This document shows, piece after piece, positions 32,458 to 36,949 of a stretch of DNA of 50,918 bases. Where the stretch lies: sequence record NC_029020.1, one strand, 5' to 3'. Every line of letters starts with the position of its first letter. Within the stretch, counting starts at the first letter, position 1. The notes under the pieces are model-generated. The model saw nothing but the letters and a program-made list of their open reading frames with translations, had not been told where the DNA came from and searched no databases. The translations under genes and the position numbers were made by a program.

Positions 32458-32745
32458 TTAGACCTCCTCGCCGTCCTCGCACAGCTCCTTTTCGTTCACG
32501 ATTTCTTCAATCGTAGTACCATTTCTGATTTTGTTCGTGATCTCTCTCATGGCGACGAGCAAAGCTATAATCGAATATTCTGGTTTCTTCACTTCTTCGA
32601 TCGTTCCGTCGTCCTTTTCTATCCAGTATCCTTTCTGTATAAGGTATTCAGAGGACAACATCTCTGGGAAGTCATCGTCGTATTTGCTTATTATTTGGGT
32701 CAGATTCTCATATGCTTTCATAAGAGTTCTGCAGTCTGGTCTCAC
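32458..32745 (-). CDS. Hypothetical acidic protein, 95 aa
   Basis: ORF track; GTG start. Confidence 0.55.
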   Translation of the reverse strand: MRPDCRTLMKAYENLTQIISKYDDDFPEMLSSEYLIQKGYWIEKDDGTIEEVKKPEYSIIALLVAMREITNKIRNGTTIEEIVNEKELCEDGEEV

Positions 32746-32831
32746 GTCTTTAATCTTCCGCGAGAAGGCTTAAAAATAAGCGAGAAGTGCCCGCTTCTTA
32801 ATCAGCTGTTTAAGGGCAGGGCAGTTTATTT

Positions 32832-32904
32832 CTAACTCGCCAGCTTACGCTGGATCTCGACTGCATCCTTCAGTTGGGTGTATTGTATTATCCTATCCAA
32901 CTTC
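32832..32904. repeat. 73-bp exact copy of the integrase 3' end (direct repeat, copy 1)
   Basis: CTAACTCGCC...CCTATCCAACTTC, identical to 34362-34434. Confidence 0.97.
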
Positions 32905-32959
32905 AGGTTTTAGGATCCTGCTCTTTTGCATAACTGGTTAGGCAAAAATTAATTTTCCT

Positions 32960-33268
32960 TCAGCCCAAAACGGTTATGTCGACTTTTATAGGGAATACCA
33001 TATAAAAGCCGAAAAAGTCGTAGAAAAATATCCAGAACAGTTCACCATTCATGATAATACTGCCTAACATAATCATGTCTCCTTCGGCCCAGTAATCTGG
33101 GACGATCCCGTTTATCGAGTCCCTATCAACTTTTATATGGAAATATTTCAAGATTTCCAATAGAATGTTAGGGTCTTTAGATTTGATATAAGTACTCAGG
33201 ATTTCTTTCAACTTTTCATCCGTTACCCTATTTATTATTTTCATGGCTTCTTCCGTGTTTCTGTCCAT
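32960..33268 (-). CDS. Hypothetical protein, 102 aa (cargo between the 73-bp repeats)
   Basis: ORF track. Confidence 0.6.
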   Translation of the reverse strand: MDRNTEEAMKIINRVTDEKLKEILSTYIKSKDPNILLEILKYFHIKVDRDSINGIVPDYWAEGDMIMLGSIIMNGELFWIFFYDFFGFYMVFPIKVDITVLG

Positions 33269-33326
33269 TTATGTCCACCAGTTCTTGATATGAATAACAT
33301 CTTTTTTATATCTTTCGTTTCGGTAT

Positions 33327-33806
33327 TTGGCACCCATTTCATTTAAATTTATTAGTGTTTCGATATATCGGTTGGTAATGAGGGACTTAACCGACGAAGA
33401 AATACTGAAAATCATGTGCTCGATTGTACCGATATACATTGAGGGTCAACGGCACACCGTTATTATGTACCTAACTGGGTGGTTATATAAGGCAGGAATA
33501 AGCTACAGGTCTGCTAAAAAACTCGTTAAATTAATATGTGAGACGTTTAATGACGGAGAATGCGATGACAGGATATATACATTAGATAGGACTTACGGGT
33601 ATAGGGGGACTCAACCGCAGAAATATAAACTAAAAACCAAAAGCGGGATATACGAACTCCTCGTCGAGGCGTTAAAAGATGAAGAAAAAGCAAAAAGAAT
33701 AATAAGGAAATTGGAGAATATACTCAGTTATAGACCGAAAAGCGTAACGTTATTTGATGTTTTCCCGAAAAAACAGAGTGAGGTGAACATGAATGAGAAT
33801 ATCTGA
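33327..33806 (+). CDS. Stand-alone primase-accessory helical domain (PriCT-1 / pRN1 helix-bundle-like); likely start ATG 33378
   Basis: EGQRHTVIMYLTGWLYKAGIS...DDRIYTLDRTY fits the remembered G.R....L.G.L.K.G...R...L..TY pattern; no AEP catalytic domain. Confidence 0.55.
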   Translation: MAPISFKFISVSIYRLVMRDLTDEEILKIMCSIVPIYIEGQRHTVIMYLTGWLYKAGISYRSAKKLVKLICETFNDGECDDRIYTLDRTYGYRGTQPQKYKLKTKSGIYELLVEALKDEEKAKRIIRKLENILSYRPKSVTLFDVFPKKQSEVNMNENI

Positions 33807-34320
33807 TTTCTTTTCCGAGTACCGTGATAAGCACCCGCTTTATCACTATGTCGTTTCGTCATGGATAAGGTCGAACCCAGGGACGTTTATAGATATAATG
33901 AAAAGGTATAAGGATTGGATATGGTTGAAAGGGAAGCCAGTATTCGTCCAGATGGAATGGCGTCACCCTAATACATTAATGTTCTACGACGTTTATATGA
34001 AAGTTTGGGCACCATACAGGAATATTCCCAATAAATTCAGATACTACCACGTTTTTATAGAAATAAAAACTGGTAAATATAATGATAACTGGGTAACTCA
34101 ATTGAGAAAGCAATATCATAACAGGAAGAGTAGTAAGCTTGGGACTAGATTTGACGATTACCCTCAACTCTTGTTTATAGCTAAGAAATCAGAAATCTCT
34201 AAATTAAAACAAGAACTAGGTAGTTATCCTACTGGTTTCCTTTTATTTTTCGAATTGGATTATATAAAACCCTATATTCAGCGTGACTTGAAATCGCTCT
34301 TATACAAAAAGCTAAGCTAG
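33793..34320 (+). CDS. PD-(D/E)xK restriction-endonuclease-like nuclease
   Basis: FYDVY...VFIEIKTG followed by helix WVTQLRKQY. Confidence 0.6.
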   Translation: MRISDFFSEYRDKHPLYHYVVSSWIRSNPGTFIDIMKRYKDWIWLKGKPVFVQMEWRHPNTLMFYDVYMKVWAPYRNIPNKFRYYHVFIEIKTGKYNDNWVTQLRKQYHNRKSSKLGTRFDDYPQLLFIAKKSEISKLKQELGSYPTGFLLFFELDYIKPYIQRDLKSLLYKKLS

Positions 34321-34361
34321 CTTGACACAAATAACCACCTAGCCTCTTACATAATTTAAGC

Positions 34362-34434
34362 CTAACTCGCCAGCTTACGCTGGATCTCGACTGCATCCTT
34401 CAGTTGGGTGTATTGTATTATCCTATCCAACTTC
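34362..34434. repeat. 73-bp direct repeat, copy 2 (last 73 nt of int, including the catalytic Tyr codon and the stop)
   Basis: Identical to 32832-32904. Confidence 0.97.
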
Positions 34435-35093
34435 TTGTGGCCAGTTACCTTTGCAATGATCGCAGGGTCTGTACCACTCTTTGAGAGAAAGCTGATTAGT
34501 GCATATCGTAGTGAGTGGGTAGTACATTTCAAGTATTTTTTAGCGAACATCCTTATCCTAGCTTTTAAATCGTAGTCGGAAATCGTTAATACGAATCTGT
34601 ACGATTGTTTATTTCTTATGATACTCGGGATGATGAAGAACTTCATATTGCCTTTTTTCTCTGCCTGGAGCTGGAACTCCCTCTGCCCCGACTCCACGAA
34701 CGTCTTGAAAGCCCTGATTGCTTCGCCTATTCTTGAACCGTTAACCAGCTGTATGAGGAGGATCGCGACGTAAGCCTCGTAGGGCATCAGGTTTAGGTCG
34801 TATAACTGTTTGTAGGCTTCCGTGAGAACTTTCTTGGCCTCGAGGAAATCGACTGAATCATCCCAGGTGTGTTCTATCCTCCTCTTTCCCACTGGCTTTA
34901 AAACTTTCTTGAGTATCTCGCTTTCTTCCCTCTTTCTTTCCTTTTCTTCCTTCGGCTTCAGCCCTAGCTTTACGGCAATCATATCAATAATGTCAGTCCA
35001 GTTCTTCTCCCTGGCTTCCTGTAAATACTCTAAAAGTTTAGGGGAGTTATCGGGAAGATTCAAGATAATTTGTTTAAGCTCCTCTTTATCCAT
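34362..35093 (-). CDS. int: Tyrosine recombinase / integrase
   Basis: Catalytic residues: GSRIGEA (R), HSLR (H-x-x-R), TGH (H), IIQYT (Y). Confidence 0.93.
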   Translation of the reverse strand: MDKEELKQIILNLPDNSPKLLEYLQEAREKNWTDIIDMIAVKLGLKPKEEKERKREESEILKKVLKPVGKRRIEHTWDDSVDFLEAKKVLTEAYKQLYDLNLMPYEAYVAILLIQLVNGSRIGEAIRAFKTFVESGQREFQLQAEKKGNMKFFIIPSIIRNKQSYRFVLTISDYDLKARIRMFAKKYLKCTTHSLRYALISFLSKSGTDPAIIAKVTGHKKLDRIIQYTQLKDAVEIQRKLAS

Positions 35094-35541: not shown

Positions 35542-35569
35542 TTTACTCGAGATATCTCTTTGATGAACT

Positions 35570-35622
35570 GATATTTAAGCTTTCTGCCTGACTGGTAAGG
35601 TAGAAAAAAGGCTATTGGCTTT
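35570..35622 (-). promoter_or_regulatory. Conserved promoter cassette A (palindromic operator plus BRE/TATA)
   Basis: Minus strand ...CCTTACCAGTCAGGCAGAAAGCTTAAATATC; 53 bp identical to 36897-36949. Confidence 0.85.
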
Positions 35623-35631
35623 TACCATCAC

Positions 35632-36423
35632 TTAGAATGTTAATGTGCTACACAATGGGCATTTGTAAGTCCTCCCGAAACGTTTCAAGTATTCCTCAGG
35701 ATCCTTTTGAATATCTCGGAAGTATATCCTTTGGTGGTTGTAAAATAACCCCGACCCTCCTTTCCTCAGCTTAGCCTCAGCCTCTACGAACTTTTGGAAG
35801 AACTCTGGGTTCTTTAACGCTAGCACTGCAAAATCTGCTGGTGTCTTGTAAGCAGAGCACCAACAATCGTAAGCTTTTCCGTAAATGTCATAAAGTGGGT
35901 TCTTCTTCAGACCGTTAACCTTTATGTACTCCTCTACATCTTTTTCTGAAAATTCGAAAATAGGAGCATACGTATAAACTTGGAATTTGGGGTGTAAATA
36001 AAATTTCACGGCACGGCTTTTCATCCAACTCTCGTCCTTTCTTACTCCCGTGATAAGGACTATTTCCTCTTTATCCTTGCCCTTCAAGAAGTCTTGTAGA
36101 GGCTCTAGTTTGAGGTAATGTTTACACCACCTCTTTGTCAGTGTAGGGAAACCTATCTTGTTCACCAACTCAAAATAGTTGTATTTGGGCCCTATAATGG
36201 TAAGCTCAATGCCCAACTCTTTAGTCACTTCTTTTACGTAATCCAATAACCCTGGTGTTGCGATACCCGTGTTAATGAATAATGCCTTTGTCTTTTCAGG
36301 ATAAATGGAGTGCGTCAAGTGTAGTGTCACCAATGAGTCTTTGCCACCGCTGAACATGACATAGATTTCTTTAAACCCGAGTAGGATCTTCTTAGCCTCT
36401 TCCTTAACTGCTAGCAGATCCAT
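35632..36423 (-). CDS. PAPS reductase / DndC-like adenine-nucleotide alpha-hydrolase family protein
   Basis: PP-loop FSGGKDS, WCKHYLKLEP, ITGVRKDES, YDCWC, C-terminal CPLC. Confidence 0.88.
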   Translation of the reverse strand: MDLLAVKEEAKKILLGFKEIYVMFSGGKDSLVTLHLTHSIYPEKTKALFINTGIATPGLLDYVKEVTKELGIELTIIGPKYNYFELVNKIGFPTLTKRWCKHYLKLEPLQDFLKGKDKEEIVLITGVRKDESWMKSRAVKFYLHPKFQVYTYAPIFEFSEKDVEEYIKVNGLKKNPLYDIYGKAYDCWCSAYKTPADFAVLALKNPEFFQKFVEAEAKLRKGGSGLFYNHQRIYFRDIQKDPEEYLKRFGRTYKCPLCSTLTF

Positions 36424-36865
36424 GACCTCCCCCTCCCCTTCCCCAATGGAGCGGATGCATCGGGTTGGTTGCGATTGATATACTATCGAGATATATCATG
36501 ATATCGTCGTACTGAGTCATATGGTACTTCAGATATATCACAATATTTTTGTAAAAGTGCCAATATTCTTCATAGATCTTCAACGCAATATATTTTCTAG
36601 ATCTCGCTATTAGCCTTTCTGCTCCATCAAAATAGAAGAATCCTAAATCATCTTCCAGTAGTTGCAAAAACTTCCTAAACTCGTCCTCAGAAAGAGGCAT
36701 ATATCTGTCGAAATCGAAATAGGTATAGATCCTTCCGTCCTCTATCTCTGGGCCCCTTATTTCGAATTTTATGCCTCTTGCCTTCAAAAATTCCTTAATG
36801 GATTCGGTTACATTTTCCCAATCATCCCTTATTTCCTTAGGGATTTCGATCTGAATTTCCGCCAT
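36404..36865 (-). CDS. Acidic small protein, candidate AcrID1-family anti-CRISPR (paralog 1)
   Basis: FDFDRYMPLSEDEFRKF and EYWHFYKNIVIYLKY..DDIMIYL resemble remembered AcrID1 FFDPEVEISKQEFEDL / EWWEFENQYLEFELDY..DEKIFV; paralogous to 38626..39015. Confidence 0.55.
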   Translation of the reverse strand: MAEIQIEIPKEIRDDWENVTESIKEFLKARGIKFEIRGPEIEDGRIYTYFDFDRYMPLSEDEFRKFLQLLEDDLGFFYFDGAERLIARSRKYIALKIYEEYWHFYKNIVIYLKYHMTQYDDIMIYLDSISIATNPMHPLHWGRGGGGHGSASS

Positions 36866-36877
36866 TTGATCCCGCGA

Positions 36878-36949
36878 GATATCTTCTGCCGAAATAGATA
36901 TTTAAGCTTTCTGCCTGACTGGTAAGGTAGAAAAAAGGCTATTGGCTTT
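36878..36949 (-). promoter_or_regulatory. Conserved promoter cassette B
   Basis: GATATCTTCTGCCGAAATAGATATTTAAGCTTTCTGCCTGACTGGTAAGGTAGAAAAAAG; nearly identical to C, and its 53-bp right part is identical to A. Confidence 0.85.

What the first reader, a model, noticed from the sequence alone, without database searches (positions are those of the whole stretch)
32832..34434. Integrase 3' end duplicated exactly, bracketing a 1.46-kb cargo: an att site inside the int tail?
The last 73 nt of int, beginning exactly at the stop codon and including the catalytic Tyr codon, recur with no mismatch 1530 bp away. Recombination between the copies would excise a 1530-bp circle carrying a PD-(D/E)xK nuclease, a primase-accessory domain and a 102-aa gene while leaving int intact. 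The repeat contains inverted repeats (CCAGC-TTAC-GCTGG, and AGTTGG...CCAACT). SSV-type integrases are known to use an att site within their own gene, but there it splits the gene. A self-restoring 3'-terminal site that captures cargo would be an integron-like acquisition mechanism (inference). A degenerate early operator (32924-32948) lies 20 bp from copy 1.
Basis: partly seen in the sequence, partly recalled or inferred. Interest (0 to 1): 0.85.

Follow-up and report, generated by a model that had tools for sequence, protein, structure and literature searches.

The report
Leftover integrase end beside inserted genes
In this archaeal virus genome a 73-base copy of the integrase gene's end sits 1.5 kb from the real one, and it is most likely a scar from recombination between virus variants at a spot where genes are often swapped, not a special capture site used by the integrase.

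Summary
The window is the complete metagenome-assembled genome of Sulfolobus monocaudavirus SMV2. The exact 73-nt direct repeat (32832-32904 = 34362-34434) is real. It begins at the int stop codon and includes the catalytic Tyr228 codon.

A Yellowstone scaffold that matches SMV2 almost base for base across the locus (L007) has the exact empty site: int, one 73-nt copy, then gp32. Relatives carry different inserts between int and gp32.

The att-site / integron-like reading is not supported:
- Of 102 related loci, only three other lineages have an integrase-tail relic. Those relics are about 77, 40 and 19 nt long and come from a different int allele.
- Most filled loci have no relic.
- The tail shows no synonymous-site constraint, and its hairpins are not conserved.
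- L007 also precisely lacks a second SMV2 cassette (PAPS reductase + gp39), which is flanked by unrelated promoter repeats.
- No integrated copies of this integrase family were found in 185,579 representative genomes.

The cargo is a low-GC patchwork:
- a nuclease-like gene that sits next to int in relatives;
- a lone domain of a plasmid-type primase-polymerase;
- an ORFan;
- an orphan promoter.

Best reading: a recombination scar whose two copies allow deletion by homology. The perfect identity of the copies could be a consensus artefact.

The parts
34362..35093 (-). int: intact tyrosine recombinase gene of the STSV/SMV family (243 aa)
   Evidence: ORF. Pfam PF00589 at 1.2e-6. Annotated as integrase in NC_029020.1. 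Catalytic residues are invariant in 41 homologues. Family name from PMC8371274.
34362..34434 (-). Repeat copy 2: the genuine 3' end of int (codons K221-S243, the last base of the K220 codon, and the TAG stop), including the Tyr228 codon
32832..32904 (-). Repeat copy 1: a 73-nt int-tail relic with no int body upstream. It lies directly next to the native downstream neighbour (the gp32 promoter), exactly as the real int end does in the empty allele L007.
   Evidence: An in-frame TAA lies just upstream, so it is not part of a longer ORF (read).
32905..34361 (.). The 1457-bp insert ('cargo'). GC is 36.0% against 43.6% for the genome. It is absent from L007.
33793..34320 (+). gp35: 175-aa protein with a D...ExK motif, a possible PD-(D/E)xK nuclease. 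It is convergent with int. Homologues sit next to the int 3' end in several other lineages and also in unrelated mobile elements.
33378..33806 (+). gp34: 142-aa stand-alone copy of the domain that follows the Prim-Pol domain in ~850-1000-aa plasmid or viral replicases. Either a gene fragment or a domesticated domain.
32960..33268 (-). gp33: 102-aa ORFan
   Evidence: only itself among 5.8 billion proteins
32905..32959 (-). Orphan early-promoter/operator-like element with no gene to drive. The operator-like motif is at 32924-32948, next to an AT-rich TATA-like stretch. The novel junction with copy 1 is at 32904|32905.
   Evidence: Read. Motif family and PMC11065993. Similar orphan elements precede the relics in L062 and L083.
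32746..32831 (-). Native gp32 promoter region, with a conserved block CTTAAACAGCTG...CTTATTTTTAAGCC. All gp32-side breakpoints in relatives fall within ~30 nt upstream of this block.
32458..32745 (-). gp32: the conserved neighbour that bounds the variable region
35548..36949 (-). Second repeat-flanked cassette, 1327 bp: gp38 (PAPS reductase) plus gp39, between two copies of an early-promoter repeat (35548-35622 and 36875-36949). It is also precisely absent from L007.

Best explanation
Copy 1 is a recombination scar. It is a 73-bp relic of an integrase 3' end, left at the int/gp32 junction when a ~1.46-kb foreign or variant segment was joined in.

The int/gp32 junction is a recombination hot spot in this virus group. 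Two co-circulating genomes recombined there. One crossover was homologous, in or near int or gp32. The other join was illegitimate and fell 73 bp inside an int gene. The product kept one complete int together with its native neighbour gp35, and stranded the other genome's int tail next to gp32.

Once formed, the two identical 73-bp copies are substrates for homology-driven deletion (RadA-type recombination or replication slippage). That deletion gives exactly the empty allele seen in L007. The integrase's own chemistry is not needed at any step.

Shown:
- the repeat;
- the empty allele;
- the variable content of the site in relatives;
- diverged relics in other lineages;
- the mosaic int alleles;
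- the patchwork cargo.

Inferred:
- the order of events (insertion into an L007-like genome, or deletion from an SMV2-like one);
- the illegitimate join;
- the enzymes involved.
For: (1) L007 matches SMV2 almost base for base over the aligned gp40-to-gp32 stretch. At the junction it has int, a single 73-nt copy, then gp32.

(2) The int-to-gp32 interval varies among close relatives. It is empty in L007, L019, L020 and L025. It holds ~1 kb in L014 and ~2 kb in L015, L018 and L023. A methylase follows int in L008. All gp32-side breakpoints lie within ~30 nt of the conserved gp32 promoter.

(3) The int-to-gp35 side of the insert is collinear with L009, L039 and L021 from inside int through gp35. 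The first ~46 nt after the stop are shared with L018. So that junction is a native adjacency, and the only novel junction is 32904|32905.

(4) The same layout (full int, insert, short int-tail relic, native neighbour) recurs in other loci:
- L062: ~77-nt relic;
- L047, L049 and L059: ~40-nt relic, now the in-frame end of a 170-aa ORF;
- L083: ~19-nt relic.
These relics are only ~80-90% identical to any tail, so they came from another allele.

(5) Int alleles are mosaic. All 12 SMV2/L007 differences lie at int nt 166-485. Tails also swap between otherwise ~95% identical int bodies.

(6) A second cassette, flanked by promoter repeats unrelated to int, shows the same presence/absence between SMV2 and L007.

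(7) The cargo looks like debris: low GC, a lone replicase domain, an ORFan and an orphan promoter.
Against: - The two copies are 100% identical, whereas relics in other lineages are diverged. A donor from another lineage should have brought a different tail. This needs a very recent event between near-identical variants, gene conversion, or consensus homogenisation in the metagenome assembly.
- The relic boundaries in SMV2 (-73) and L062 (-73 to -77) nearly coincide although the inserts are unrelated. A purely random illegitimate join does not predict that.
- No donor genome carrying gp33/gp34 was found, so the join could not be reconstructed.
- No reads were available, so the filled form rests on one published consensus.
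Confidence: 0.6

Rival explanations
1. Int-catalysed site-specific capture. A core site in the last ~73 bp of int acts as an attachment site. Circular DNA carrying the same sequence is integrated and excised by Int, and the int reading frame is restored each time.
For: - The exact repeat is bounded by the stop codon, and the exact empty site exists.
- Different cargo sits behind the same int end in relatives.
- Relic boundaries in SMV2 and L062 lie within 0-4 nt of each other (-73 and -73 to -77) in unrelated inserts.
- Divergence between alternative tail types begins at about the same place (~-75).
- ATV, a bicaudavirus with a homologous Int, is reported to integrate (PMC8371274).
Against: - Most filled loci have no second tail. 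Where a relic exists, its length differs (~77, ~40, ~19 nt) and its sequence differs from the resident tail.
- There is no synonymous-site constraint in codons 217-243.
- The hairpins are not conserved.
- The int-to-gp35 junction is a native collinear adjacency in other lineages.
- A cassette with unrelated repeats behaves the same way.
- No provirus or int fragment turned up in 185,579 genomes, so no att site is known for this family.
- The clustering of boundaries near -75 is also expected from homologous exchange in the highly conserved AKITGH-coding block just upstream.
Confidence: 0.12
2. Assembly or consensus artefact. SMV2 is a consensus of a mixed population. Either the insert belongs to a different co-occurring variant and was threaded in through the shared 73-mer, or the structure is real but the perfect identity of the copies results from consensus calling dominated by the abundant empty variant.
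For: - The record is metagenome-assembled with 295 N.
- The only independent assembly of this strain's locus (L007) lacks both repeat-flanked cassettes.
- No other contig carries the exact proteins or the 32904|32905 junction.
- Relics in other lineages are diverged, unlike here.
Against: - The junction of cargo to a truncated tail must exist in some read for any assembler to place it, so a tail relic next to this cargo is probably physical.
- The same architecture is seen in three contigs from three samples (L047, L049, L059) and in L062, so such structures do occur in nature.
- There are no ambiguous bases between 30.2 and 40 kb.
Confidence: 0.15
3. Nuclease-driven spread. gp35 is a free-standing homing-type endonuclease that cuts int-bearing genomes near position -73. 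Repair from a gp35-carrying genome copies the gene in. When the far side lacks homology, end joining leaves the cut end (the tail from -73) as a relic.
For: - gp35 has a D...ExK motif.
- Its homologues lie beside the int 3' end in several lineages, in both orientations, and also occur in unrelated elements.
- Presence/absence differs between near-identical genomes.
- There is a patch of divergence inside int that resembles a co-conversion tract.
- Relic boundaries nearly coincide in two lineages.
Against: - Nuclease activity is not shown; fold matches are weak.
- The L062 and L047 inserts contain no gp35 homologue.
- SMV2 retains the presumed target intact in both its int and the relic, so it would have no immunity to its own nuclease.
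Confidence: 0.05

Closest known systems
Repeat-flanked insertion/deletion variants formed by recombination between short sequence motifs in Sulfolobales conjugative plasmids and viruses
   Same: Variants of one element differ by blocks of genes bounded by short direct repeats, and a single copy is left after loss. [quoted passage not shown] Cassette 2 here, with its promoter repeats, is a plain example.
   Different: At the int site the repeat is not a dispersed regulatory motif. It is the coding end of a gene, so a separate event was needed to create the second copy.
SSV-type archaeal integrases (attP inside the int gene, gene split on integration)
   Same: Both are tyrosine recombinases of archaeal spindle-shaped viruses. 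The idea of a recombination site inside the enzyme's own gene comes from this family (PMC8371274, PMC4390879).
   Different: SMV2 Int belongs to a separate STSV/SMV family. No att site is known for it. No split int or provirus was found. Here int stays whole, and the repeat flanks viral DNA, not a host tRNA.
Integrative elements that carry the 3' end of their target gene (classically tRNA genes) and so restore it on insertion
   Same: The geometry matches: an intact gene, then the inserted DNA, then a displaced copy of the gene's 3' end.
   Different: In those elements the inserted DNA encodes its own integrase, and the repeat length is fixed by the crossover site (established knowledge). Here the insert has no integrase, relic lengths vary (~19-77 nt), and relics differ in sequence from the resident end.
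Integrons (IntI, attI, attC cassettes)
   Same: A tyrosine recombinase gene sits next to a site where gene content varies.
   Different: There are no attC-like folded sites at cassette ends, no array and no common promoter arrangement. The variable site lies 3' of int, not 5'. The repeat is int coding sequence. Most filled relatives lack any repeat.
Free-standing homing endonuclease genes of T-even phages (Seg/Mob; recalled from memory, not tested)
   Same: A nuclease-like gene lies between conserved genes, is present or absent among close relatives, and has mosaic flanks.
   Different: No demonstrated nuclease activity, no target-site immunity polymorphism, and other relic-bearing inserts lack the gene.

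Membership tests
Tyrosine recombinase (Phage_integrase, PF00589) | Catalytic residues R, K, H-x-x-R, H/W and the Tyr nucleophile, in canonical order and spacing | tested here: met
   R121, K146, H193, R196, H219 and Y228 are invariant in 41 homologues. Pfam hit at 28.8 bits against a cut-off of 27.1.
SSV-type integrase system | attP lies inside the int ORF and matches a host (tRNA) sequence | tested here: not met
   No tRNA or tRNA-like element in the genome. The tail coding pattern has no match in 185,579 genomes.
SSV-type integrase system | Integrated copies with int split into N and C parts at the element's ends | tested here: not met
   No N-terminal relatives and no C-terminal tail matches in representative genomes. 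Absence from one genome per species is not proof.
Integron | Cassettes each ending in an attC site with conserved folded structure, inserted at attI next to intI | tested here: not met
   Hairpins in the repeat are kept in only 10 and 11 of 78 alleles with no covariation. There is one insert, not an array. Other filled loci lack repeats.
Integron | Recombination of the sites by the adjacent integrase | not testable with these tools
   Needs biochemistry or genetics.
Homology-flanked indel (recombination between direct repeats) | Identical direct repeats bound the segment, and an otherwise identical genome has one repeat copy and no segment | tested here: met
   for the int-tail repeat. for the promoter repeat of cassette 2.
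Recombination scar / partial gene relic | The extra copy is a truncated gene end without function of its own, variable in length and sequence among lineages, next to a native neighbour | tested here: met
   Relics of 73, ~77, ~40 and ~19 nt, the last three diverged, always directly before the native downstream promoter.
PD-(D/E)xK nuclease (gp35) | Conserved D...(D/E)xK motif on an alpha-beta-beta-beta-alpha-beta core | tested here: inconclusive
   Motif D66, E90, K92 is invariant in 15 homologues. The model has pLDDT 77 with a three-strand core. The best fold hits are restriction endonucleases, but E >= 0.07. No Pfam hit.
Free-standing homing endonuclease | The carrier genome is protected by a changed target site | tested here: not met
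   The SMV2 int tail and relic are identical to L007 from at least -200 to about +270.

The most novel reading that the evidence does not exclude
A defined break or strand-exchange point lies about 73-77 bp before the end of int in STSV/SMV-type integrase genes. It would be made by Int itself acting on a site within its own gene, or by the neighbouring gp35-type nuclease. Foreign DNA would be joined there repeatedly while a complete int is kept. Bicaudaviruses would then have a dedicated gene-acquisition site anchored in the integrase gene.

The supporting hints:
- relic boundaries nearly coincide in two unrelated inserts (SMV2 at -73, L062 at -73 to -77);
- alternative tail types begin to diverge at ~-75.
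Probability: 0.12. Interest if true: 0.7.

Novelty: new member of a known kind. Interest (0 to 1): 0.33.

Why it matters
As it stands, this is a tidy example of how large archaeal spindle viruses reshuffle genes. The 3' flank of int is a recombination hot spot. Gene blocks come and go between near-identical variants, and short relics of the integrase end record past joins.

That helps in reading metagenome-assembled archaeal virus genomes. It also flags the SMV2 reference as one of at least two co-existing forms.

It would matter more if the breakpoints proved to be site-specific. This integrase family currently has no known attachment site or demonstrated activity, and such a result would give it a function.

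Tried and rejected
- Exact-protein look-ups of SMV2 int and gp35 found only the NCBI record.
- gp33 has no homologue anywhere.
- The 32904|32905 junction occurs only in SMV2 in IMG/VR.
- The single-protein scan of IMG/VR found only SMV2 itself.
- The genome scan with the int alignment, and the scan with a degenerate tail pattern, both found nothing. No provirus or attB could therefore be examined.
- tRNA and Rfam scans of the genome were empty.
- The first self-tail search used an 11-nt word and missed the diverged relics. They appeared only with more sensitive settings and a panel of tails.
- The fold search of the gp35 model gave no significant match.
- gp35 has no match in the plasmid collection.
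- I could not find the paper that described the SMV2 assembly in the library (one search failed on syntax). How the consensus was built is therefore unknown.
- I considered that copy 1 might be the 3' end of a longer ORF. It is not: an in-frame TAA lies just upstream.
- I considered that the GCCAGCGAGCTA after the int stop in L019, L020 and L025 is a mini-relic. It is better read as the second arm of an inverted repeat.
Full report
**What the window is.** The 50,918-nt window is identical to the complete genome of Sulfolobus monocaudavirus SMV2 (KP238129.1 / NC_029020.1). SMV2 is a circular genome of the Bicaudaviridae, from the USA. It is an archaeal virus assembled from metagenome data. The sequence carries 295 isolated N, none between 30.2 and 40 kb.

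**The observation.** The repeat is exactly as described. Window 32832-32904 equals 34362-34434, 73 nt with no mismatch, 1530 nt apart, and identity stops abruptly at both ends.
- Copy 2 is the end of int (34362..35093, minus strand, 243 aa).
- On the coding strand the repeat starts at the last base of codon K220 and runs through the TAG stop.
- It includes the codon of Y228. Y228 is invariant in 41 homologues, as are R121, K146, H193, R196 and H219. It has the spacing expected for the tyrosine nucleophile.
- Pfam places the protein just above the Phage_integrase threshold.
- A review of archaeal tyrosine recombinases lists STSV/SMV integrases as a separate, uncharacterised family (PMC8371274).

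**The empty site exists.** The closest int homologue in the protein database is 98% identical. It lies on a 4.8-kb Celera scaffold from a Yellowstone metagenome (L007).
- Aligned to SMV2, L007 is almost base-for-base identical from gp40 to gp32.
- It has int, one copy of the 73-mer, and then directly the 86 nt that follow copy 1 in SMV2 and gp32.
- This is what recombination between the two copies would produce.
- It shows that filled and empty forms exist among near-identical genomes, provided the SMV2 consensus is right.

**A second cassette behaves the same way.** L007 also lacks a 1327-bp block holding gp38 (PAPS reductase) and gp39.
- In SMV2 this block is bounded by a 75-nt direct repeat whose last 52 nt are identical (35548-35622 and 36875-36949).
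- L007 has a single copy.
- The repeat is a copy of the early-gene promoter/operator motif described for SMV2 (PMC11065993). It has nothing in common with the int tail.
- Repeat-bounded gain or loss of gene blocks is therefore a general property of this genome, not something tied to int.

**The int 3' flank is a hot spot.** I retrieved 80 metagenome loci and further IMG/VR loci with int homologues. Among close relatives the interval between the int stop and the conserved gp32 promoter varies:
- empty in L007, L019, L020 and L025;
- ~1 kb in L014;
- ~2 kb in L015, L018 and L023;
- a DNA methylase follows int in L008.

In SMV1 the interval holds a 65-aa gene, and in SMV4 about 4.5 kb of other genes. 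All gp32-side breakpoints lie within about 30 nt upstream of the block CTTAAACAGCTG...CTTATTTTTAAGCC. More distant int alleles are followed by a different conserved neighbour, a small gp40-like gene.

**The repeat is not the rule.**
- Each locus's own int tail, searched against that locus, found no second copy.
- A more sensitive search with a panel of all tails against 102 loci found relics only in SMV2, L062 and the L047/L049/L059 group.
- By eye, L083 has a ~19-nt remnant.
- In L062, a ~365-nt insert is followed by a ~77-nt tail encoding KLSRIVQYTQSKDAVEILRKFST*. This differs from the resident tail (...KDTKYITRYTQIKDALEIQRKLAS*). It lies directly before the native gp40-like gene.
- In L047, L049 and L059, three contigs from three samples, a 664-nt insert carries a promoter and a 170-aa ORF. 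The last 12 codons and stop of that ORF are a ~40-nt int-tail relic.
- L083 shares its insert ends with L062 but keeps only ~19 nt of tail.

The layout 'full int, insert, short int-tail relic, native neighbour' thus recurs. But the relic lengths differ and the sequences come from another allele. Most filled loci (L014, L015, L018, L023, L008) have no relic at all. In IMG/VR only SMV2 has two tails.

**No sign of a cis-acting site in the tail.**
- Across 78 distinct int coding sequences, normalised synonymous-codon entropy in codons 217-243 is 0.77-0.82. That is among the highest in the gene.
- The two hairpins are retained in only 10 and 11 of 78 alleles, without compensatory changes.
- The modest folding z-score of the SMV2 73-mer (-2.5) is therefore probably incidental.
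- No tRNA-like sequence is present.
- Neither N-terminal int motifs nor the C-terminal tail pattern occur in 185,579 representative genomes. Nothing is known here about where, or whether, this family integrates.

**The cargo is a patchwork.** Its GC content is 36.0% against 43.6% for the genome.
- gp35 has homologues (54-82% identity) beside the int 3' end in several lineages: convergent at +10 in L009, L021, L039 and L075; in the same direction in L010; about 1 kb away in L018 and L023. Homologues also occur in unrelated elements (L012, L013).
- SMV2 is collinear with L009 and L039 from inside int through gp35. It shares the first ~46 nt after the stop with L018. The copy 2/gp35 junction is therefore an ordinary inherited adjacency.
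- gp35 has an invariant D66...E90-x-K92 motif. Fold matches are weak, and several of the better ones are nucleases.
- gp34 matches residues ~200-400 of Prim-Pol replicases of 850-1000 aa. These include the replicase of a 4967-bp Saccharolobus plasmid. gp34 is a lone internal domain.
- gp33 has no homologue at all.
- Between gp33 and copy 1 lies an early-promoter-like element with no gene to drive. Similar orphan elements precede the relics in L062 and L083.
- The only junction with no counterpart elsewhere is 32904|32905.

**Int genes are mosaic.**
- All 12 differences between SMV2 and L007 int lie at nt 166-485, 11 of them in 321-485.
- Pairs of alleles with ~95% identical bodies can have tails only ~64% identical, and the reverse also occurs.
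- The switch between the two tail types begins right after the conserved AKITGH-coding block, about 75 nt from the end.

This fits frequent homologous exchange, with int as one anchor of the variable region.

**Best explanation (confidence ~0.6).** Copy 1 is a recombination scar. Two co-circulating genomes recombined at this hot spot, with one homologous crossover and one illegitimate join 73 bp inside an int gene. One intact int with its native neighbour gp35 was kept, and the other genome's int tail was stranded beside gp32. The two identical copies then allow homology-driven loss of the insert, which gives the L007 form. I cannot tell which of SMV2 and L007 is the derived form.

**Weak points.**
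- The perfect identity of the copies needs a very recent event, gene conversion, or consensus homogenisation.
- The SMV2 and L062 relics start at nearly the same place. With three independent events and an unknown upper limit on relic length, I estimate this has a chance probability somewhere between about 0.04 and 0.3. That is suggestive, not significant.

**Rival explanations.**
- Int-catalysed capture at a tail att site (~0.12). It is favoured only by the geometry and the near-coincident boundaries, and is contradicted by the points above.
- An assembly or consensus artefact (~0.15). This cannot be excluded without reads. A tail relic next to this cargo must exist in some read, however, and analogous structures recur in independent contigs.
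- Homing-type spread driven by gp35 (~0.05). SMV2 keeps the presumed target intact, and the other relic-bearing inserts lack the gene.

**Verdict.** It is a new example of a known kind of feature, a recombination scar with a repeat-flanked indel in an archaeal virus variable region. A small residual chance remains that the break point in int is site-specific.

Noticed in passing
window 35548-36949: A second repeat-flanked cassette, 1327 bp, holds gp38 (PAPS reductase) and gp39 between two copies of the early-promoter repeat. It is precisely absent from the near-identical scaffold L007. In L030 a PAPS reductase + gp39-like pair sits instead in the int 3' flank, so this pair moves as a unit.
   Followed up: partly
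window 34609-34928 (int nt 166-485): All 12 nucleotide differences between SMV2 and L007 int fall in this stretch, 11 of them in nt 321-485. The last 244 nt of the coding sequence are identical. This looks like a gene-conversion patch inside int.
   Followed up: partly
int codons 220-227 across L014-L108: Two alternative forms of the segment just before the catalytic Tyr (KKLDRIIQ-Y versus KDTKYITR-Y or QDYRYIVR-Y) are exchanged between otherwise ~95% identical int genes. The divergence starts right after the GH219 codons.
   Followed up: partly
L059:1672-2184 (also L047, L049): A 170-aa ORF behind an early-type promoter ends in frame in a 40-nt integrase-tail relic (...KDAVEILRNLST*). A new gene has borrowed the old int stop.
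   Followed up: partly
L062:2522-2596: The 77-nt tail relic forms a 24-codon mini-ORF (MKLSRIVQYTQSKDAVEILRKFST) downstream of an orphan promoter. It includes the Tyr codon. Whether it is expressed is unknown.
   Followed up: no
int codon R239 (window 34377-34379): This Arg is encoded by CGT in nearly all of 78 alleles (entropy 0.30 for a six-fold degenerate residue), although neighbouring synonymous sites vary freely. This points to a single-codon nucleotide constraint (CGTAA) of unknown cause.
   Followed up: no
L027, L031, L033, L034 downstream of int: gp40-like genes, and in L027, L031 and L034 also gp41 homologues, lie convergent to int just after its stop. In SMV2 they lie upstream on the same strand. 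The int gene seems to be inverted relative to its neighbours in some genomes.
   Followed up: no
L002 11207-11948 (SMV4): The SMV4 int is split into 84-aa and 142-aa ORFs in the deposited record, in a region with ambiguous bases. It is either broken or a sequencing problem.
   Followed up: no
L091:127-174 versus 1122-1169+30: A perfect 48-nt inverted copy of the int end plus downstream sequence lies on the other side of int in a 1243-nt contig. It is probably a palindromic assembly artefact.
   Followed up: no
int codons ~43-60 and ~175: These are the stretches of int with the lowest synonymous diversity (0.42-0.53). If this family has a site inside its own gene, as SSV-type integrases do, this would be a better place to look than the tail.
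   Followed up: no
L013 (Thermofilum MAG contig JAEMPR010000014.1) and L012: gp35 homologues (66-68% identical) occur in elements with quite different gene content (SSV1 D-63-like, TFIIB-like, STIV B116-like neighbours). The gene moves between unrelated archaeal mobile elements.
   Followed up: no
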